Source of the DNA: Raja brachyura
Taxonomy: Eukaryota
Assembly: GCA_963514005.1 (NCBI GenBank)
Contig: OY740805.1
Coordinates: forward strand, 36,828,001 to 36,892,000
Length of the DNA: 64,000 nucleotides
Reading direction: 5' to 3'
The notes below the pieces were generated by a model. That model was given only the letters and a program-made list of their open reading frames with translations, did no database searches and was not told the origin of the DNA. Every line of letters starts with the position of its first letter. Positions within the stretch are counted from its first letter, which is position 1. Shown here in pieces: positions 2,268 through 61,390 of the stretch. The translations under genes were made by a program, and so were the position numbers.

Positions 2268-5200
2268 TTTTTTTTTGTTAGAAGTAAGTACAATAGTGTG
2301 GTACTTGAGTACCTAATACATACATACATATTTCCATTCTTGTGCAACTTCGTATTTTTTATTTAATAATAAAAGAACAGTGGAAGAAAAAAGAAATAAT
2401 GAGTGTCAGAATAGACAGACAAGCGAGTAGCAACAGATAGCAAAAGAAATAATGGACCTAGAAGAGAAGCTGAAAAGTTTGAAATAGAAGGAGAAAGTAA
2501 AGAAAAGAGAGATTAGGAGAGATCTACCTATTTCGTATTTTTGCCCATCTGTCACCCAGTTCTAAACCATTTAATTTCTAAGGTTGCACCATATGCTTGT
2601 AAAAAGTTGATAAAAGGAGACCAAGTCTCTGAGAATTGGTCTACTTTGCCTAGTAGGAGAAATCTCATTTCTTCAAGATGAAGCATTTCACAAATATTTG
2701 ACATCCACATTTTGAATGTTGGCATGGTTGCGTTTTTCCAAAATTTGAGTATAAGTTTTTTTGCTCTTATTAGACCGTAATTAAGAAAAGCTTCTTGGAA
2801 TATAGTTAGTTTACTTCCCTCTTCCATTGATCCAAAGATAATCAGTTCTGTATTGGGGTTCAATTTTGTGTTAAATAGTTTTGTAAAAATTCCAAAATTG
2901 ATACAGTTTTATACAAGAGACAAAGGAATGTGCTATCGTGGCATTTTGAGTTAGACATTTGTCACAGATGGGGGAAACATTTGAGAATATTTTATTCAGT
3001 CTAGTTTTAGAATAATATAATCTATGTAAAATTTTAAATTGAATTAGGTTGTCTCGCATTAATTGAATATTTATTTACATTTAATAATTTTTTTCCCCAT
3101 CTATCATTAGGAATTTCTATCAATAACTCGTGTTCCCAGTCCCTTCTAATTGCCTCTGTCGTTGGTGTTCCTATATTTAAAATTATATTATATAAGTAAG
3201 ATACTAAATTGCTTGATTCTGCCTTTCTATTCATTCCTTCCTCCAATAAATCTAGGGTTAGGGTTTGATATCCTTGTATATATTTCTTCAAATAATCTTG
3301 AACTTGAAGATATTTGAAATATTGATTATTTTTCAAATTATATTTTAGTTGTAATTGTTGGAATGATAAAAGTTTTCCCATATCATACATATCTCCCATT
3401 GTTTTAATTCCTAATCTTTCCCAATGGATAAACTTTTATCAATAATGGATGGTTTGAATGAGGGATTATTAGTTATTCGAGAAAGAAGCGATAATTTTCA
3501 TAATTTTAAAGTTAATTTTATTTGATTCCAAATTCGTATTATACTGTGAATAATTGGATTCTTCTTATAGATTATACTGTTCAGTTTCATCAGGGAAAGA
3601 AGCATCGCTCCTATATTATAAGGGGAACAATCCTCTTTCTTCATTCTTATCCAATCTACCTGTTGGGCAGAATTGTCCAACCAATAGATTATATTTTCAA
3701 TATTCACTGCTCAATAGTAGTACAATAAGTTAGGGAGTGTCAGTCCCCCTGATTCTTTTGATTTACACAAGTGTTTTTTCTTAATTCTATGTGATTTATC
3801 ATCCCATATGAAGTTTATAATACTAGAATCTAATTTTTTTAAGTTTTTTTTAGGTAAGTATATTGGCATTGATTGAAATAGGTACAGTATTTGTGGTAAG
3901 GAGATCATTTTTATCGCGTTTATTCTGCCTATTAAGGACATCGGCAGTGTTTTCCAGAATTTAATCAACCCATTTAATTTAGTTATTAAAGGCATATAGT
4001 TTGCATTGCGTAATGATTTATATTTCCTAGTAATTTGGATGCCCAAATACTTAAATTTTGAAGGGGCATTTCAACAGATGTATCGGCTCTTGAGGTTTTA
4101 TCGTCATAATTTTGCTTTTGTTCCAGTTTATTCTATATCCTGAAAAAGAACCAAATTCCTCTATTAAATTTAGTATATTTGGTGTGCTCTTTTGCGAATT
4201 AGTAATATATAATAATGTCGCCTGCATATAATGAAATTTTATTATTTGAGTGTTTGGTATTGTATCCATGAATATTCGGATGACTTCTTATATTTTCTGC
4301 TAAAAGCGCTATCTCTAGTGCAACTAGCAGAGGTGACAGTGCGCACCCCTGCCTATTGCCCCTTGCCAATTGGAATTTCGGGGTTAATATATTATAAGTC
4401 AGTATTCTAGCCGTCGGCTTATCATATAATAATTTTACCCATGAGGTAAAGTTATCTCCCATGTTAAATTTTTGCAATACTTTGAATAAATATTGCCATT
4501 CTACTTGATCAAAAGGTTTTTCTGCATCCAATGAGATAATTGCTAGGTCTTCTTCAGTATTATGTGAGTACTTTATATTAGACAGCCGTCTCAAATTGTT
4601 AAATGAGTATCTCTTTGGTATAAACCCAGTTTGATCCGGGTTTATTAGTTTGCTAACATATTTACTCAATCTTCTCGCTAGTGTCTTTGCTAATATTTTT
4701 TGATCTGTATTTAAGAGTGCAGTAGCTCTATATGAGCCTGGGTCTTCTAGATCTTTATCCTTTTTTGGTATAAGTGTAATAGTTGACTCAGTTAGTGTTT
4801 CTGGTAGTTTATTTTCTTTAAAAGCGTATATATATAAATCTTGCAAGTGTGGAGAAATTATCTCGTGGAATCTTTTATAGAATTCATTACCAAAGCCGTC
4901 CTGTTCTGGCGTTTTGCCATTCTTCCACAAACTTATTGTTTCTTCTATTTCCTGAAGTGTAATCTGAGCTCCTAATCCCTCTTGTTCCACCATATTTAAT
5001 TTTGGAAGATTACAATTGTCTAAGAAATTTGTAATTTGAGTATTATTTGCAGAGGTTTTTGATGTATATAAATTTTGATAATATTGAGCAAATCTTTTAT
5101 TTATATCTTTAGGTAATGTTAGTAATTCCCCTTTGTCTGATTTAATTTTAGTAATTGTATTTTCTGTTTCCCGTTTTTTCAGTCGGCGCGCTAAGAGTTT

Positions 5201-6860
5201 ATGTGGTTTATCACCAAATTCAAAATTTTCTTGTTTTGTAATTTGAAATAATCTTATTATTCTGGCTGATAAAATTGTATTTAATTTATATTTTAGTATT
5301 GTTATCTTATTGTGTTTATCTATAGTTGGTTCTTGAGCATTTTCTAAATCTAATTGTCTAATTTCTTGCTCTAACTGTAATTGTTCAGTATTATTCTTAT
5401 TATTTTGGAAAGCTTGATATGGGATTATAGTTCCTCTTATAAATGCCTTAAAAGTTTCCCATAATAAGGAGGGTGAACTATCTGGTGTGACATTTGTCTC
5501 AAAGAAGAATTTCATCTGCTCTTTTAAATATGTACAACCTTGTGAGTTGTTTAAGATTTGGGGGTTAAACCTCCAACACGATTTTTTATCAGGCATTCCT
5601 TCTAATTTTAAAGAGAAAGTTAACGGGGAATGATCAGAAATAATACTTTTGTGATATTTAGCATTATATGTGTATGGAATTAATTTTGTGTCCACTAAGA
5701 AATTATCAATACGTGAATATGTTTTATGTACCGTTGAATAAAATGAATATTCTCTACATACTGGGTTAGCGATCCTCCATACATCGGTCATATTGGTATT
5801 TTTCATGTATGTATTTAGGAGTTCACCAGTTTTAGATTTTATGTTAATCCTTTTGTGTTTTGCAGATTTATCCAAATATGGATCTAAAGCACAATTCAAA
5901 TTTTCCCCTATTACCACATTTTGATAGTTAAGTTCTGAAATTGTATCCAGAATTTTACTAAAAAATTGAGGGTTGTCAAAATTAGGAGCATAAATATTTA
6001 TCAAAGTAAGTGGAGTAGAATAAATTTATCCCGTGACCATGACGTACCTCCCCTCTTTTTCTGCTATGGTATTCTTTAATTTAAATGGTATACCTTTACG
6101 AATGATAATGGCCGTGCCTCTAGATTTAGAAGTAAATGAAGAGTAGTATATTTGCCCTATCCAATTTGCCTTCAGTCTTATCTGTGTTTGATATTTCAGA
6201 TGCATCTCTTGTAAGAAAATGACATCACTATTTAAAGCTTTTAATTGGGCAAAGATCTTAACCCTTTTAATTGGTTCATTAGCGCCCCTTATATTCCAAC
6301 TGCAGAACGTGATTCCTTCAGTTTTCTTTTGTTTATCGTCTTGCATTATGGATCATGTTAATACCTTTACTTCATATGGTGCAACCAAGAACCTCATTAC
6401 TCTAGGTGAGGGATGATCATCCCCAGCTATTAGATTTTGTTGGCATCTCCCCTTCAGAATAGACCTTGAAAAAGACCAGAAAGTGCAGAGTCGTGGAAAG
6501 ATAATTAACAAACAAAAAGTGATATTATAATATCCAAAAATAAAGATATTATAATTAAAAACAAACCACCAACAGGTGGTAGAAAAATTCTTATCGACTT
6601 CCGTAGATGTTTTTATATGTTTCGCTCTGCCCCCTTGACCAATTATTTATAAGTGGAAGAGAGAGGGATACAAATGTTAAAAAAAATATATATAAAATAA
6701 AACTCACTCCAATATATAGATTAGAAATGTATCTTCAAAGAGGAAAAACAAAATAAAAGAGAATTTCCAACATTAAGTATATACTTAGATATAACAGTGA
6801 TTATGTTAATTATATATCCATATCTATCGATATGCCAAGATCTATTACAATTAAGTCTCA
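2268..6860 (-). mobile_element. LINE-1 (L1 clade) element, ORF2 degenerate, no ORF1 recognised
   Basis: Minus-strand ORF pieces 6346->2552 give an APE endonuclease (SWNIRG, FLQEMHL, INIYAPN, SDHSP), an RT (GFIPKR, RQGCALSPLL, SLYAGD) and a C-terminal Cys/His region (CDKC...H...C). Several frameshifts and stops are present, with a short T-run (poly-A tail) at ~2268-2276. The 5' boundary is approximate. Confidence 0.9.
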
Positions 6861-22319: not shown

Positions 22320-22650
22320 TTCAGTTATAGTTTTTAGTTTAGTTGAGGGATACAGCGCGGAAACAGGCCCTTCGGCCCACCAGGTCCACACTGACCTGCG
22401 ATCCCCGAACATCAACACTATCCTACACCCACTAGGGACAATTTACATTTTGCACAAGCCAATTAACTTACGAACCTGCACGTCTTTGGAGTGTGGGAGG
22501 AAACCGAAGATCTCAGAGAAAACCCACCAGGTCACGGGGAGAACGTACAAACTCTGTATGGACAGCACCCGTAGTCGGGATCGAACCCGGGTCTCCGGCG
22601 CTGCAAGCGCTTTACGGCAGCGACTCTACCGCTGGGCCACCGTGACCACG
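22320..22650 (-). mobile_element. tRNA-derived V-SINE (HE1-like)
   Basis: Minus strand shows an A-box-like gtggcccagcggtagag, a B-box ggttcgatccc, a conserved core and a (ctaaa)n tail. Confidence 0.8.
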
Positions 22651-24989: not shown

Positions 24990-26145
24990 CAACTGGTGGA
25001 CAAACTGGGGGACTTGGGACTTCCACACTCCACCTGCATGTGGATAAATAGCTTCCTGTCGGGCCGCAGCCAGAGAGTCAGAATGGGCCTTCACACATCC
25101 ACGGCCCTCAGCCTCAGTACCGGCTCTCCACAGGGCTGCGTGCTGAGCCCCCTGCTTTACACCATCTACACACATGACTGCACCTCCGCCCACCACAGCA
25201 ACACCATTGTCAAATTTGCAGATGACACTACGGTGGTGGGGCTCATCTCCGGGGGGGGGAGGGGGGGGGGGGGGCGAGTACGCCTATCGGGATGAGGTGG
25301 AGCAGCTGACAGTGTGGTGTGGAGAAAATAACCTGCTCCTGAACACCTTAAAGACCAAGGAGACAATAATAGACTTCAGGAATAACAAAACGGACATGGT
25401 ACCACTAATCATCAGAGGGGACTGTGTGGAGAGGTGGCGGATTTCCGCTTCCTGGGAATCCATATTGAGGAGGACCTGACATGGAGCGTGAACACCTCTG
25501 CGCTGCTGAAAAAGGTCCAGCACAGACTGCACTTCCTGAGGGTGCTCAGGAAGAATAACATCACACAGAAACTGCTGCTGTCCTTTTATCGGTGCTCCAT
25601 CGAGAGCATCCTAACATACTGTGTATGCGTGTGGTACACCAGCTGCACAGCAGCTCAGAGGAAAGCGCTCCAGAGGGCCATTGACAACACCCAGAGGATT
25701 GTCGGCTGCCCTCTCCTTGCCTTGGAGGACTTACACAGTTCCCGCTGCATCAAAAAATCCCAGAATATTATAAAGGACATTTCCCACCCCGGACACTCCC
25801 TGTTTGAACTGTTGCCGTCAGGCAGACGGTACAGATCTACAAGGACAAGGAAAAACAGACTTAAAAACAGTTTTTACCCCACTGCTATAAAGGCACTAAA
25901 TGTAGCCGCCAAGGAACGCGGGGACTAAGGGACTGTGGTTGGTACACTGTGAAATCGACAGAAGGATGTAGGGTTGGGTGTTTATGCGTGCTGTTTTCAT
26001 ATTTCATATTTATTTTAGTTGTTTATCTTTTTTAATATATTATCTTGTATGTATCGTTAGCTTTTATGGTTTGAATGGTGCACTGACTGGTTGACATTTT
26101 TTAATTTCGTTGTACATGGTTCATGTTACAATGACAATAAAAAAA
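24990..26145 (+). mobile_element. Rex1/Babar LINE 3' portion
   Basis: TGSPQGCVLSPLLY..THDC..IVKFADDTTVVGLI, FLGIHI..DLTWS, FYRCSIESILTY, RLKNSFYP. Frameshifted at a poly-G tract; the 3' UTR ends atgacaataaa. Confidence 0.88.
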
Positions 26146-27378: not shown

Positions 27379-27803
27379 CTCTGGAGTTTAGAAGGATGAG
27401 AGGGGATCGTATTGAAACATATACGATTATTAAGGGTTTGGACACGCTAGAGGCAGGAAACATACTTGGCGAATAAAGTGCGATTCTGATTCTGAGATGG
27501 TGCATTAATCGAAGGTAGACAAAAAGCTGGAGAAACTCAGCGGGTGAGGCAGCATCTATGGAGAGAAGGAATGGGTGACGTTTCGGGTCAAGGGTCTACA
27601 CCCGAAACGTCACCCATTCCTTCTCTCCATAGATGCTGCCTCACCCGCTGAGTTTCTCCGGCTTTTTGCCCACCTTTAAACAATCATAGTTAAGTTTAGT
27701 TTAGAGACACAGCGTGGACACAGGCCCTTCGGCCCAGCGATTCTCCGCCGACCCGCGATCACCTGGACGCTAGTTCAATCCCACACACACGAGCGACAAT
27801 TTA

Positions 27804-27862
27804 CAGACTCAATTTCTGGTCTCCAGCTGGAGGCGTGGGTTCGAATCCCACCTCTGACACCA
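27804..27862 (+). pseudogene. Reverse-transcribed 3' two-thirds of mature tRNA-Leu(CAA), with CCA
   Basis: CAGACT-CAA-TTTCTGGTCTCCAGCTGGAGGCGTGGGTTCGAATCCCACCTCTGACA-CCA: anticodon arm, long variable arm, T-arm, acceptor 3' strand and CCA. The 5' part (D-arm/A-box) is missing. Confidence 0.88.
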
Positions 27863-28040
27863 TGTTGGTTTTTAAGTCCTTGGAATAATAAAGACCTCAC
27901 ACCATGTCAGGTTATACACTGTTTATTTAGAATAAACAACTACAAGCTCTCACTTGCGAGTTTACTTCAGACTGACGAGTGCAGTAAACCGCGACGTTAA
28001 TAAGCTAATGGGCGTAACTACAAAAGCATGACTCATAACA
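27863..28040 (-). mobile_element. Solo LTR (Gypsy-like), immediately followed by a tRNA-Leu PBS
   Basis: Minus strand reads TGTT...AACA (178 bp) with AATAAA at 27927-27922, then directly TGGTGTCAGAGGTGGGAT. Confidence 0.72.
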
Positions 28041-28251
28041 TGAGCCACTAATTTACACCAATTAACCAACGTACCTGCACGTCTTTGGAATGCGGGAGCG
28101 CGCGGTCACAGGGAGAACATGCGAACCCATAGTCAGGATCGAACCCGGTGAGGCAGCAACTCTACTGCTGCGCCATAATCGGGGGGGGGAGGTGGGGAGG
28201 GGGGGGGGGAGGTGAGGGAGGGGGGAGGAATATTTTTGCAGCAAACCTCAC

Positions 28252-50545: not shown

Positions 50546-53500
50546 TACTGATTTGGGATGATCAGCCATGATCACATTGAATGGTGATGCAGGCTCGATG
50601 TGCCGAATGGCCTACTCCTGCATCTATTGTCTATTGTCTAATTGGCCCTCTGTGGTTTAGAGTGATTTTAGTTTTAGATCAGAGATACAGCATGGAAACA
50701 GGCCCTTCGGCCCACCGAGTCCGCGCCAACCAGCGATCCCCGCACAGTAACACTATCCTACACACACTAGGGACAAGTTACACATGCACAAAGCCAATTA
50801 ACCTACAAACCCGCACGTCTTTGGAGTGTCGGAGGAACCCGAAGATCTCGGAGAAAACCCACGCACGTCACGGGGAGAACGTACAAACTCCGTACTGACA
50901 GCACCCGTAGTCGGGATCGAACCCGGGTCTCAGGCTCGGCGTGTGCCGTTAGGCAGCAACTCTACCGCTGCGAAACGCGGGCCGCTGTTGCAATAAGTAG
51001 TTGCTGACTCAACTACCTCCTCTGGCAGCTCGTTCCATACATCCACCACCCTCTGTGTGAAAATAATTGCCCCTCAGGTTCCTATCAAACCTTTGCCTCT
51101 CTTTTTAAACCTGTCCTCTGGTTTTCCAATACCCCAACTCTTTGGAAATACTCTGTCTCGAGTCGAAACGTCACCTATTCCTTCTCTCCAGAGATGCTGC
51201 CTGACCCGCTGAGTGACTCCAGCTTTTTGTGTCTCTCTTTTGAGCATTCAATATGCAATAGGTGCAGGAGTCGGCCATTCGGCCCTTCGAGCCAGCACCG
51301 CCATTCAATGTGATCACGGCTGATCATCCCCAATCAGTACCCCGTTCCTGCCTTCTCCCCATATCCCCTGACTCCGCTATTTTTAAAGAGCCCGATCTAG
51401 CTCTCTCTTGAAAGCTTCAAGAGAACCGGCCTCCACCGCCCTCTGAGGCTGAGAATCCCGAGGCAGATGTTTCCTCCCATCTACATATCACGATCAGTCT
51501 GGGCTGTTACCTGGAGTTATCTTTTCGCTTGGGCAGCTTACACTGCAGCGGTATGAAGACTGACTTCTCTAACTTCGTCGCCCTTGCTTTCCCTCTCTCT
51601 CTCCTTCTCCGAGCTAACAATAGATATTCCACATGTTCCTTGAATCCAACCCCTCTGGCACAGGACATCCTCCAAATAAACGAGAGAAAGTCTGAGGTCA
51701 TCCTACTCGGCCCCTCCGACCCCATCAAACCGATAACAGGCCAAACATCCTTAGTCAAAGCGCACGTTAAAAATCTGCCGAGATATTTGACTCCGCATTA
51801 GGAAGTGAAGAAAATGAATGGCCTGTTGGCCTTCATAACTTATCTTATAGAAACTTATAGAAACTTACAAAATTCTTAAGGGGTTGGACAGGCTAGATGC
51901 AGGAAGATTGTTCCCGATGTTGGGGAAGTCCAGGACAAGGGGTCACAGCTTAAGGATAAGGGGGAAATCCTTTAGGACCGAGATGAGAACTTTTTTCACA
52001 CAGAGAGTGGTGGGTCTCTGGAACTCTCTGCCACAGAGGGTATGGAGAGAAGGCAGGTACAGGATACTGAGTTGGATGATCAGCCATGATCATATTGAAT
52101 GGCGGTGCAGGTTCGAAGGGCCGAATGGCCTACTGCTACACCTAATTTCTATGTTTCTACAACAAGTGGAACCGAATATAGGAGCAAAGAGGTCCTTCTG
52201 CAGTTGTACAGAGCCCTAGTGAGACCACACCTGGAGTATTATGTACTGTTTTGGTCCCCTAATTTGAGGAAGGACATTCTTGCTATTGAGGGAGTGCAGC
52301 GTAGGCTTACAAGGTTAATTCCCGGGATGTGGGACTGTCATATGCTGAGAGAATGGAGCGGCTGGGCTTGTATACTCATGGATGAGACGGAATCTATTGA
52401 AACATGTAAGATTGTTAAGGGTTTGGACACGCTAGAGCCAGGAAACATGTTGGGGGAGTCCAGAACCAGGGGCCACACAGTTTAGGAATAAAGGGTAAGC
52501 CATTTAGAACGGAGATGAGGAAACACATTTTCTCACAGAGAGTGGTGAGTCTGTGGAATTCTCTGCCTCAGAGTGCGGTGGAGGCCGGTTCTCTGGATGC
52601 TTTCAAGAGAGAGCTAGATAGGGCTCTGAAATATGCCTTCTCCCCATATCCCCTAACTCCACTAACCCTAAGAGCTCTATCTAACTCTTTTCACTTCTCT
52701 CTCTCACCTCCCTCCTTCTCACAGAGAGTTGTGAGTCTGTGAAATTCTCTGCCGCAGAGGGCAGTGGAGGCCGGTTCTCTGGATACTTTTCAGAGAGAGC
52801 TAGATAGGGCTCTTAAAGATAGCGGAGTCAGGGGATATGGGGGAGAAGGCAGGAAAGGGGTACTGATTGTGGATGATCAGCAGTGATCACATTGAATGGC
52901 GGTGCTGGCTCGAAGGGCCGAATGGCCTACTCCTGCACATATTGTCTATTGTCTAAAACCTATCTCTACTCCCTAGAGTTTTTGAGCCCCTCTGAGGGGG
53001 CGCTGTAAACAGTTTAAGTATGTATTGTTAGGTCTGTCTACCGTTGTATATAGCACATTAGTACCTTCACTGATGTGAAGCACTTTGATCGTGCTATACT
53101 GGATAGACTCGGCTTGTACTCGCTAGAATTTAGAAGATTGAGGGGGGATCTTATAGAGACTTACAAAATTCTTTAGGGGTTGGACAGGCTAGATGCAGGA
53201 GGATTGTTCCCGAAGTTGGGGAAGTCCAGAACAAAGGGTCACAGTTTAAGGATAAGGGGGAAGTCTTTTAGGACCGAGATGAGAAAAACATTTTTCACAC
53301 ATAGATTAGTGAATCTGTGGAATTCCCTGCCACAGTAGGTAGTTGAAGCCAGTTCATTTAAGAGGGAGCTAGATGTGGCCCTTGTGGCTAAAGGGATCAG
53401 GGGATATGGGGAGAAGGCAGGTACAGGATACTGAGTTGGATGAGCAGCCATGATCATATTGAATGGCGGTGCAGACTTGAAGGGCCGAATAGCCCTCCTG

Positions 53501-60513: not shown

Positions 60514-61077
60514 CAAACTAGATCATAGGAAAATCACAGGATCAAAAGCAGGCATGTGTCAGATACTAGTTTAGTCTAGTTTAGTTAACCCACAAACCCT
60601 CATGTCTAGTTTTAGTTTAGAGATACAGTGCGGAAACAGGCCTTTCGGCCTAACGAGTCCGGTCCGACCAGCGATCCCCGCACACTAACACTATCCCACA
60701 CACACATTCGGGACAATTTACAATCTTTGCGGAAGCTAACTAGCCTCCATTCCTGCGCGTCTTTGGAGTGTGGGAGAAAACCGGAGCGCTCGGAGGAAAG
60801 CCACGCAGGTCACAGGGAGAACGTGCAAACTCCGTACAGGCAGTACCTGTAGTCATGATTGAACCTGGGTCTCTGGCTCTGGGAGGCACCGACTCTACCG
60901 CTGCACCACCGCGCAGCGGTTTAGTTACGTTTAGTTAAGTTTAGTTTAGTTCAGAGAAGAATTGTGGAAACAGGCCCTTCGGCCCACTAAGTCCATGCTG
61001 ACCAGCGATCACCCCTTCACAAAAGTTCCATATTGTCCCCTTTCTCATGCACTCCATATGAACCAGGGGTCAATTTA

Positions 61078-61390
61078 GGTGGCACAGCGGTAGAGTTGCT
61101 GCCTCACAGCGCCGGAGACCCGGGTTCGATCCCGACTACGTGTGCTGTCTGTACAGAGTTTGTACGATCTCCCCGTGACTTGCGTGGGTTTTCTCTGAGA
61201 TCTTCGGTTTCCTCCCACACTCCAAAGACGTGCATGTTTGTAAGTTAATTGGCTTGGTGTATGTGTAAATTGTCCCTAGTGGGTGTGTGTGTGTAGGATA
61301 GTGTTAGTGTTCGGGGATCGCTGGTCGGCGCAGACTCGGTGGGCCGAAGGGCCTGTTTCCACACTGTATCTCTAAACTAAAACTAAACTA
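61078..61390 (+). mobile_element. tRNA-derived V-SINE (HE1-like)
   Basis: Full head-core-tail architecture. Confidence 0.85.

What the first reader, a model, noticed from the sequence alone, without database searches (positions are those of the whole stretch)
27804..28050. Fossil reverse-transcription intermediate: solo LTR joined to 59 nt of its mature tRNA-Leu(CAA) primer, with modification scars
Seen: the minus strand reads a 178-bp TGTT...AACA LTR with AATAAA, then TGGTGTCAGAGGTGGGAT (a tRNA-Leu PBS). The tRNA match does not stop at the usual ~18 nt; it runs through the T-arm, variable arm and anticodon. The copy includes CCA and has no intron after the anticodon, so the template was mature tRNA. 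It has T instead of G at position 37 and ends at about position 28. No gag/pol or second LTR is present, and it sits inside a SINE with aatttaca on both sides. Known: plus-strand strong-stop synthesis normally halts at m1A58 of the primer; tRNA-Leu carries m1G37 (RT misincorporation) and m2,2G26 (RT block). Inference: strong-stop DNA read through m1A58, misread m1G37, stalled at m2,2G26 and was captured without integrase, leaving a genomic record of tRNA modifications. If such LTR+long-tRNA units are multicopy, they would be a new minimal LTR-tRNA mobile element.
Basis: partly seen in the sequence, partly recalled or inferred. Interest (0 to 1): 0.85.

Follow-up and report, generated by a model that had tools for sequence, protein, structure and literature searches.

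The report
Retroelement end fused to copied tRNA primer
A 246-255 bp insertion inside a fish-type SINE joins the end of a retrovirus-like element to a DNA copy of 59 bases of its tRNA-Leu primer, about three times the normal 18 bases; it looks like a failed reverse-transcription product trapped in the genome, but I could not check its copy number or find its parent element.

Summary
On the minus strand, a TGTT...AACA segment (28040-27863) carrying AATAAA runs with no spacer into the reverse complement of tRNA-Leu(CAA) positions 76 to 28 (27862-27804). The tRNA copy includes CCA and has no intron. It has T at position 37, and A58 is unchanged. The unit splits a SINE that is uninterrupted in five other copies in the window, and it is flanked by a TGTAAATT duplication.

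- Nine further inserted bases (28049-28041) lie before TGTT. They form a 9-pair hairpin with the first "LTR" bases (chance about 0.005, against about 0.05 for the TGTT/AACA inverted repeat).
- The duplication is 6-8 bp, which does not fit an integrase.
- An 11-nt gap in the SINE abuts the left duplicate.

So "complete solo LTR" is not shown. The 187 nt could equally be R-U5.

My best reading is an abortive reverse-transcription intermediate with a copy of its primer tRNA, inserted without integrase. It could be either minus-strand DNA still carrying its primer or plus-strand strong-stop read-through.

Precedents are the PBS tails after the 3' LTR of MuERV-L and Ty1 cDNA capture at DNA breaks.

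An unchecked note from this scan (s1-880924) reports a 45-nt PBS elsewhere in this genome.

The parts
28050..28057 (-). Left copy of the duplicated target TGTAAATT. It is part of the host SINE.
   Evidence: The SINE consensus carries this motif once, and other copies are continuous here.
28041..28049 (-). Nine inserted bases (AGTGGCTCA) before the TGTT start. Bases 28048-28040 pair with 28036-28028 in a 9-pair hairpin (7 Watson-Crick pairs plus 2 G-U) with a 3-nt loop.
   Evidence: Fold. The same stem-loop was flagged. In 20,000 shuffles a terminal stem of 9 or more pairs arose at a rate of 0.0046.
27863..28040 (-). 178-nt LTR-like segment, TGTT...AACA. It contains at least R-U5 of a retroelement; a complete LTR is not shown. 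It also has a TGAGTCA motif at 28035-28029 and an Inr-like TCAGTCT at 27975-27969.
   Evidence: There is no other copy in the window and no Rfam family. The 4-nt terminal inverted repeat arises by chance at about 0.046.
27922..27927 (-). AATAAA poly(A) signal. It sits in a small GTTTATT/AATAAAC inverted repeat and is followed about 15-20 nt later by CA and a GT-rich stretch.
   Evidence: position 123 of the 187-nt insert.
27804..27862 (+). DNA copy of tRNA-Leu(CAA) positions 28-76, sense on the + strand. It covers the 3' CCA, A73, acceptor 3' strand, T arm, long variable arm, anticodon loop and 4 nt of the anticodon stem 5' strand. The first 18 nt next to the LTR-like end are the normal primer-binding site.
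   Evidence: Read. ARAGORN and Rfam are silent because positions 1-27 are missing.
27813..27813 (+). tRNA position 37: T where tRNA-Leu has G (m1G37 in known eukaryotic tRNA-Leu).
   Evidence: MMLV-type RT gives mostly T mismatches at modified sites.
27798..27805 (-). Right copy of TGTAAATT. Its first two bases (27805-27804) can equally be tRNA positions 29-28, a 2-nt microhomology.
27690..28175 (-). Host SINE copy (tRNA-like head, many copies in the window), split by the insertion. Relative to other copies it lacks 11 nt immediately left of the left duplicate.
   Evidence: Other copies have 14-17 nt between TAATTGG and AATTGTC (most 15-17). This copy has only 4 once the insert and one duplicate are removed.

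Best explanation
The insert is a dead-end product of reverse transcription of an LTR retroelement or retrovirus that used tRNA-Leu(CAA) as its primer. It holds 187 nt of the element lying just upstream of its primer-binding site: R-U5 with its poly(A) signal, and possibly a whole short LTR. This is joined directly to a DNA copy of the primer tRNA itself.

The polymerase making the strand complementary to the tRNA did not stop after 18 nt at position 58. It ran on through the T arm, the variable arm and the anticodon loop. It placed A opposite position 37 and ended at about position 28, just before position 26.

The piece then entered a staggered break or nick pair in a SINE without integrase, leaving a 6-8 bp duplication and a 2-nt microhomology at the tRNA end.

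Two intermediates give the same sequence:
- (i) Minus-strand DNA still covalently carrying its primer tRNA, made double-stranded by synthesis that ran from the DNA into the tRNA.
- (ii) Plus-strand strong-stop DNA that read through position 58.

I lean slightly to (i), about 55:45, because the insert begins at a hairpin that looks like the 5' end of R rather than at the TGTT.

Shown: the junction, the extent of the tRNA copy, the mismatch at position 37, the duplication, and the empty-site comparison.

Inferred: which intermediate it was, the role of tRNA modifications, and the route of insertion.
For: - The junction ...AACA|TGG has zero spacer, and the tRNA complement is contiguous for 59 nt with intact stems, a CAA anticodon, a class II arm and A73.
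- AATAAA is followed by CA and a GT-rich stretch 60 nt before the junction.
- The insertion is absent from five other copies of the SINE, and TGTAAATT is duplicated.
- The insert ends are not LTR ends, and 6-8 bp is outside the 4-6 bp made by integrases (established knowledge).
- The hairpin at the insert's 5' end uses the 9 'extra' bases, p about 0.005. Its two G-U pairs work only in the sense RNA.
- Without the stop at m1A58 or m5Um54, plus-strand synthesis continues into the tRNA and yields DNA that cannot be integrated (PMC8599865).
- Human tRNA-Leu isodecoders, CAA included, show mutations at 58, 37 and 26, and stops at 37 and 26 (PMC5066629).
- MMLV-type RT mostly writes T at such sites (PMC8062790).
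- tRNA-Leu-primed MuERV-L leaves PBS tails after its 3' LTR in 10 of 26 new insertions and in about 6.5% of genomic proviruses (PMC5930517).
- In yeast, Ty1 LTR cDNA intermediates carrying cDNA-only nucleotides are captured at breaks (PMC11372161).
Against: - This is a single locus. One G-to-T change and one endpoint could be an ordinary mutation and an accidental joint.
- A58 shows no scar, although m1A58 is normally near-stoichiometric. The primer must therefore have been unmethylated there, or read correctly by luck.
- The endpoint is at 28-30, not exactly 27 as a stop at m2,2G26 predicts.
- No parent element, no LTR boundary, no species tRNA-Leu gene set and no read support could be examined.
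- The 11-nt gap in the SINE next to the left duplicate is not explained by a simple target-site duplication.
Confidence: 0.6

Rival explanations
1. This is the reader's exact version, a sub-case of the best explanation. The 178 bp is a complete solo LTR. The unit is plus-strand strong-stop DNA (U3-R-U5-PBS) that read through m1A58, misread m1G37, stalled at m2,2G26 and was captured without integrase.
For: - TGTT...AACA termini.
- TGAGTCA, an A/T-rich heptamer about 30 nt before an Inr-like TCAGTCT, and AATAAA would together give a compact U3-R-U5.
- Plus-strand read-through is the predicted result of a missing stop at position 58.
- PBS tails after the 3' LTR are documented for a tRNA-Leu-primed ERV.
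Against: - Plus-strand strong-stop DNA should begin exactly at U3. Here nine further inserted bases precede TGTT. They are not purine-rich, so they are not a polypurine tract remnant, and they pair with the first LTR bases in a hairpin with chance about 0.005. The 4-nt inverted repeat that defines the LTR start has chance about 0.046.
- 178 bp is short for a vertebrate retroviral LTR.
- No second LTR or parent element was available to fix the boundary.
Confidence: 0.27
2. The unit is one copy of a multicopy element, or a copy of a pre-existing genomic locus. One possibility is a young SINE-like family built from a tRNA-Leu primer plus the retroviral R-U5, the strong-stop-DNA route proposed by Ohshima and Okada in 1993. 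Here it would be 5'-truncated and inserted by a LINE. The other possibility is a parent retroelement whose leader already carries the long tRNA complement.
For: - Read on the + strand, the piece is tRNA part, then CCA, then a 187-nt body. It is truncated at the 5' end with a 2-nt microhomology and flanked by a 6-8 bp duplication, as in LINE-mediated insertions.
- LINEs with EN and RT domains are present in the window.
- Another note of this scan reports a 45-nt PBS elsewhere in this genome (s1-880924, unchecked).
Against: - There is no second copy in 64 kb, although the host SINE has more than 20.
- The stems of the tRNA part are all intact, which is unlike most SINE heads.
- There is no LINE-like tail, simple repeat or poly(A) at either end.
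- The terminal hairpin is weaker in the + strand RNA, with two A-C mismatches.
- This copy lacks the A box, so it could not itself be a pol III source.
Confidence: 0.2
3. A full provirus integrated with a tRNA-copy tail after its 3' LTR, as seen for MuERV-L. Later recombination between its two LTRs left a solo LTR plus the tail.
For: - Tails of linker plus PBS after the 3' LTR occur in about 6.5% of full-length MuERV-L proviruses.
- Solo-LTR formation is the commonest fate of proviruses (established knowledge).
Against: - The left end should then be a canonical LTR end next to a 4-6 bp duplication. Instead there are nine extra bases and a 6-8 bp duplication.
- The reported tails are various lengths of the PBS itself, not 59 nt.
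Confidence: 0.07
4. The adjacency has nothing to do with priming: a tRNA pseudogene that happens to lie next to unrelated sequence, LINE template switching from an unrelated RNA onto a tRNA, or an assembly artefact.
For: - tRNA/LINE-1 chimeras and tailless tRNA retropseudogenes exist in mammals.
- Read support could not be checked.
Against: - The tRNA copy starts exactly at CCA and abuts ...CA of a segment with a poly(A) signal at the right distance. This is the arrangement of an LTR-PBS junction.
- The reported tRNA/L1 chimeras mostly carry 5' halves (positions 1-37) in antisense.
- Tailless retropseudogenes are 3'-truncated.
- An assembly chimera would not produce a precise duplication inside one SINE.
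Confidence: 0.04

Closest known systems
PBS tails after the 3' LTR of MuERV-L / ancML insertions (Blanco-Melo et al. 2018, PMC5930517)
   Same: The element is primed by tRNA-Leu. The LTR end is followed by a copy of primer-derived sequence and then host DNA. The authors attributed this to aberrant plus-strand strong-stop DNA. It is also present in germline copies (about 6.5% of full-length proviruses).
   Different: In MuERV-L the tails are a 5-nt linker plus various lengths of the PBS, attached to full proviruses with a 5-bp duplication. Here the copy runs 59 nt, to the anticodon stem, there is no provirus, the duplication is 6-8 bp, and nine extra bases lie at the other end.
Capture of Ty1 cDNA intermediates at chromosomal double-strand breaks in yeast (Moore & Haber 1996 and Teng et al. 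1996, from memory; Yu et al. 2024, PMC11372161)
   Same: LTR-containing reverse-transcription intermediates insert without integrase. Many carry nucleotides found only in cDNA.
   Different: Those are experimental, somatic events in yeast joined by end joining without a target duplication. This is a natural germline event in a vertebrate-type genome, with a duplication and a long tRNA copy.
Strong-stop-DNA model for the origin of tRNA-derived SINEs (Ohshima, Koishi, Matsuo & Okada 1993, PNAS 90:6260; citation confirmed, paper not held, content from memory)
   Same: The model predicts a genomic unit of primer tRNA, then CCA, then U5-R of a retrovirus. That is exactly how the + strand reads here.
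   Different: The model needs a full tRNA with A and B boxes so that pol III can transcribe it. This copy lacks positions 1-27, and nothing shows that it ever multiplied.
Read-through of the primer tRNA when m1A58/m5Um54 are missing (Fukuda et al. 2021, PMC8599865), and tRNA inserts in retroviral circle junctions (Colicelli & Goff 1986, from memory)
   Same: Synthesis continues past position 58 into the tRNA and gives a product that cannot complete replication.
   Different: Those were observed in vitro or in unintegrated DNA of infected cells, not as a heritable genomic insertion.
LINE-mediated tailless tRNA retropseudogenes and tRNA/LINE-1 chimeras (PMC5322556; bioRxiv 10.1101/2025.02.02.635956)
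   Same: They are partial tRNA copies flanked by target duplications, with truncation points at structural or processing sites.
   Different: Tailless forms keep the 5' end and lose the 3' end, and the chimeras mostly carry positions 1-37 in antisense. Here the 3' 49 positions plus CCA are kept, fused in register to a retroelement end.

Membership tests
Solo LTR of an LTR retrotransposon / endogenous retrovirus | TG...CA termini with a short inverted repeat | tested here: met
   TGTT...AACA at 28040 and 27863. However, a 4-nt match within the first 13 nt arises by chance at about 0.046.
Solo LTR of an LTR retrotransposon / endogenous retrovirus | LTR ends directly flanked by a 4-6 bp target-site duplication | tested here: not met
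   Nine extra bases lie on the left and 59 nt of tRNA copy on the right. The duplication is 6-8 bp.
Solo LTR of an LTR retrotransposon / endogenous retrovirus | Homology to the paired LTRs of a full-length element | not testable with these tools
   There is no copy in the window. The metagenome and viral collections hold no match. No search of this genome was available.
Primer-binding site of an LTR retroelement | Complement of the 3' end of a tRNA, CCA included, starting 0-5 nt after the LTR/U5 end | tested here: met
   TGG starts immediately after ...AACA and the complement continues without a break.
Plus-strand strong-stop DNA (U3-R-U5-PBS) | 5' end at the first base of U3, next to the polypurine tract | tested here: inconclusive
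   The insert starts 9 nt before TGTT. Those 9 nt are not purine-rich and belong to a hairpin. The U3 boundary cannot be fixed without the parent element.
Minus-strand strong-stop DNA with attached primer (tRNA-CCA-U5-R) | The non-tRNA part ends at the 5' end of the genomic RNA (the start of R) and contains the poly(A) signal of R but no U3 | tested here: inconclusive
   AATAAA is present, and the insert begins 1 nt before a stable hairpin that is better in the sense RNA. Absence of U3 cannot be shown without the parent element.
tRNA-derived SINE | Internal pol III promoter (A and B boxes) in a tRNA-like head | tested here: not met
   Positions 1-27, which hold the A box, are absent. Only the T-arm B box is present.
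tRNA-derived SINE | Many dispersed copies with a LINE-related or A-rich 3' tail | not testable with these tools
   There is one copy in 64 kb and no tail at either end.
LINE-mediated (target-primed) insertion | Variable target-site duplication of about 6-20 bp, with microhomology at the junction where synthesis ended | tested here: met
   A 6-8 bp duplication with a 2-nt overlap at the tRNA end. There is no poly(A) or LINE tail, so the template was not a usual LINE substrate.
Functional tRNA-Leu gene | Full cloverleaf, no encoded CCA, an intron in the Leu-CAA genes of vertebrates | tested here: not met
   ARAGORN finds no tRNA in the window. The 5' 27 positions are missing, CCA is present and there is no intron. 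The intron rule is from general knowledge.

The most novel reading that the evidence does not exclude
This locus is a germline-fixed snapshot of a reverse-transcription intermediate still joined to its primer tRNA. It is the tRNA-CCA-U5-R unit that Ohshima and Okada proposed as the seed of tRNA-derived SINEs. It also records the modification state of one ancient tRNA-Leu(CAA) molecule: A58 unmethylated or read correctly, m1G37 misread as T, and synthesis ending before m2,2G26. If further units of this kind exist in the genome, their endpoints and mismatches would give a natural map of tRNA modification written in DNA.
Probability: 0.3. Interest if true: 0.7.

Novelty: new variant of a known kind. 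Interest (0 to 1): 0.5.

Why it matters
Retroviral replication depends on the plus strand stopping at position 58 of the primer tRNA. What happens when that stop fails is known from cell culture and in vitro work, and from short PBS tails on MuERV-L. I found no report in the searchable library of a heritable insertion that carries the primer copy as far as the anticodon stem.

If more such units exist, the finding would matter in three ways:
- They would show that dead-end intermediates reach the germline by an integrase-independent route.
- They would give a concrete example of the proposed strong-stop-DNA origin of tRNA-derived SINEs.
- They would allow tRNA modifications of extinct molecules to be read from genomic DNA.

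As a single unverified locus, it remains an instructive curiosity.

Tried and rejected
Steps that failed or gave nothing:
- **The look-up of encoding contigs.** I tried it on the ORF across the left junction.
- **Exact LTR patterns.** Searches of metagenome contigs and viral contigs gave no match, as expected for a vertebrate-type repeat.
- **The search of earlier findings.** The search by sequence was blank, which means nothing here. The searches by words found only unchecked notes.
- **Rfam and ARAGORN.** Neither gave a tRNA or retroviral RNA family on the unit.
- **Pfam on the large ORFs of the window.** This found a LINE EN/RT but no gag, pol or integrase, so no parent element lies nearby.
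- **Ohshima 1993.** The paper is not held, so its content is cited from memory.

Readings I rejected:
- **A tRNA gene with a chance CCA trailer.** The piece has no 5' half and no intron, and it abuts ...CA in register.
- **A 3' tRNA half.** The copy spans the whole anticodon loop.
- **An hAT-type 8-bp duplication.** There are no terminal inverted repeats.
- **Snap-back synthesis as the source of the nine bases.** That would give a perfect and longer inverted repeat.

Full report
**What is there**

I read the minus strand directly.
- A 178-nt segment runs from 28040 to 27863. It starts TGTT, ends AACA, and carries AATAAA at 27927-27922. About 15-20 nt after the AATAAA come CA and a GT-rich stretch.
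- Immediately after ...AACA comes TGG (27862-27860), then the complement of a discriminator A.
- After that, without a break, come the complement of an acceptor 3' strand, a 5-bp T stem with its 7-nt loop, a long class II variable arm, and a 7-nt anticodon loop.
- Last are four bases of the anticodon-stem 5' strand, ending at 27804.
- On the + strand the anticodon is CAA (27810-27812).
- Position 37 (27813) is T, where tRNA-Leu has G.
- Position 58 (27844) is an unchanged A.
- No intron follows the anticodon.
- The copy therefore covers tRNA positions 28-76, which is 59 nt. The normal primer-binding site is 18 nt.

ARAGORN and Rfam report no tRNA. That is expected, because positions 1-27 are missing. 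I had no tool-supplied tRNA-Leu(CAA) sequence for this organism. The assignment rests on the anticodon, the class II arm, A73 and the intact stems.

**Context**

- The unit lies inside a SINE that has more than 20 copies in the window.
- In an alignment with five other copies, the SINE is continuous across this point and the focal copy alone carries the insert (A1).
- TGTAAATT occurs once in the SINE consensus. In the focal copy it stands on both sides of the insert, at 28057-28050 and 27805-27798.
- The first two bases of the right copy can equally be tRNA positions 29-28. The duplication is therefore 6-8 bp, and the tRNA copy ends at position 28-30 with a 2-nt microhomology.
- The large ORFs of the window include a LINE with EN and RT domains but no gag, pol or integrase.

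1. Nine inserted bases (28049-28041) lie between the left duplicate and TGTT.
   - They are not purine-rich, so they are not a remnant of a polypurine tract.
   - Bases 28048-28040 pair with 28036-28028 in a 9-pair hairpin with a 3-nt loop.
   - In 20,000 shuffles of the 187 nt, such a terminal stem arose at a rate of 0.0046. The 4-nt inverted repeat that defines the supposed LTR start arose at 0.046.
   - The two non-Watson-Crick pairs are G-U in the sense RNA and would be A-C in the antisense RNA.
   - The retroelement-derived part is therefore best taken as 187 nt beginning at a hairpin, not as 178 nt beginning at TGTT.
2. With the insert and one duplicate removed, this SINE copy has only 4 nt between two motifs. 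Other copies have 14-17 nt there, most of them 15-17. The 11-nt gap abuts the left duplicate.
   - This SINE copy has several other deletions, so the gap may be a coincidence.
   - It may also mean the insertion was not a clean target-site duplication.
3. A58 carries no mismatch.

**What it most likely is**

The end of a segment with a poly(A) signal abuts the complement of the CCA end of a tRNA with zero spacing. That is the hallmark of tRNA-primed reverse transcription. Neither a chance neighbour nor LINE template switching would give this register.
- Reported tRNA/LINE-1 chimeras mostly carry positions 1-37 in antisense.
- Tailless tRNA retropseudogenes lose the 3' end.

The genomic RNA of a retroelement carries only the 18-nt PBS. 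The further 41 nt must therefore have been copied from the primer tRNA molecule itself at some point. The insert ends are not LTR ends, and 6-8 bp is outside the 4-6 bp made by retroelement integrases (general knowledge). Insertion without integrase is thus likely. It could have occurred at a staggered nick pair, such as LINE endonucleases make, or at a break repaired with fill-in.

Two intermediates give the same double-stranded sequence:
- (i) Minus-strand DNA still covalently attached to its primer (tRNA-CCA-U5-R...), made double-stranded by synthesis that ran from the DNA into the tRNA.
- (ii) Plus-strand strong-stop DNA (U3-R-U5-PBS) that read through position 58.

It has support.
- Without the stops at m1A58 and m5Um54, plus-strand synthesis continues into the tRNA and the product cannot be integrated (PMC8599865).
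- The segment can be read as a compact LTR with TGAGTCA, an A/T-rich heptamer about 30 nt before an Inr-like TCAGTCT, and AATAAA.

Version (ii) leaves the nine bases and their hairpin unexplained. Version (i) accounts for every inserted base. The insert would start at the 5' end of R, where many retroviral RNAs carry a hairpin (general knowledge). The TGTT would then be a chance match. I lean to (i) at about 55:45. Without the parent element this is not settled.

**Modification scars**

Background supports the idea.
- All human tRNA-Leu isodecoders, CAA included, show mutation signals at m1A58, m1G37 and m2,2G26, and stops at 37 and 26 (PMC5066629).
- An MMLV-derived RT writes mostly T at modified sites (PMC8062790). 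That matches G37 read as T.

The limits are as follows.
- This is one locus, with one substitution and one endpoint.
- The endpoint is 28-30, not 27.
- Position 58, which is normally almost fully methylated, is read correctly. The primer must therefore have lacked m1A58, or it was bypassed correctly. A primer lacking m1A58 fits well with the failure to stop, but it is an extra assumption.
- I rate the scars as plausible, not shown.

**Rivals**

- **A multicopy family or a copy of a pre-existing locus** (about 0.2). This could be a SINE-like element of the Ohshima-Okada type, or a parent element whose leader already carries the long match.
  - Read on the + strand, the piece looks like a 5'-truncated retrocopy with a duplication and microhomology.
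  - LINEs are present in the window.
  - Another note of this scan reports a 45-nt PBS elsewhere in the genome (s1-880924, unchecked).
  - Against it: no second copy in 64 kb, intact tRNA stems, and no tail.
- **A provirus with a tRNA tail on its 3' LTR that later collapsed to a solo LTR** (about 0.07). The non-canonical left end and the duplication length argue against it.
- **Chance adjacency or an assembly artefact** (about 0.04). The precise duplication within one SINE makes it unlikely.

**Comparison with what is known**

- The closest documented case is the tRNA-Leu-primed MuERV-L. Ten of 26 new insertions of the reconstructed element, and about 6.5% of full-length genomic proviruses, carry a linker plus various lengths of the PBS after the 3' LTR. 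The authors attributed this to aberrant plus-strand strong-stop DNA (PMC5930517).
- In yeast, Ty1 LTR cDNA intermediates with cDNA-only nucleotides are captured at breaks (PMC11372161).
- The strong-stop-DNA model of SINE origin (Ohshima et al. 1993; citation confirmed, text not held) predicts exactly a tRNA-CCA-U5-R unit.
- The present locus differs in three ways: the length of the tRNA copy (to the anticodon stem), the absence of a provirus, and its mode of insertion.
The library is incomplete, so this is not proof of novelty.
- I class the locus as a new variant of a known kind.

- The look-up of sequencing runs gave no run holding more than 0.36 of the sampled words. Its result could not be interpreted without laying reads.
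- The public collections hold no match to the LTR-like segment.
They are listed as next steps.

Noticed in passing
window 27531-27657: A near-perfect hairpin repeat of about 126 nt lies just beyond the SINE tail. It scores on both strands against several miRNA precursor families (the two best are plant families), all below their gathering thresholds. It is most likely a palindromic repeat or MITE-like element, not a miRNA gene.
   Followed up: no
window 28181-28228: A G-rich / C-rich low-complexity array (periods 17-20) lies at the 5' side of the host SINE copy.
   Followed up: no
window 28058-28060 / 28050-28057: The host SINE copy lacks 11 nt, relative to other copies, immediately left of the left target duplicate. 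Other copies have 14-17 nt between TAATTGG and AATTGTC (most 15-17), against 4 here. This may be a small target deletion or a templated patch made at insertion, or an older deletion.
   Followed up: partly
window 4199-6004 (-): A 601-aa ORF has a reverse-transcriptase domain and a weak endonuclease-RT match, so it is a LINE fragment. This shows that APE-type LINE machinery exists in this genome.
   Followed up: partly
window 25434-25928 (+): A 164-aa ORF matches Pfam ALKBH8_N (E 2.4e-17). It may be a LINE-associated domain rather than a host gene.
   Followed up: no
window, many sites (e.g. 22330-22600, 50670-50980, 61075-61385): There are more than 20 copies or fragments of the same tRNA-headed SINE in 64 kb. 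CpG observed/expected is near 1 in the focal copy, against 0.55 for the whole window.
   Followed up: partly
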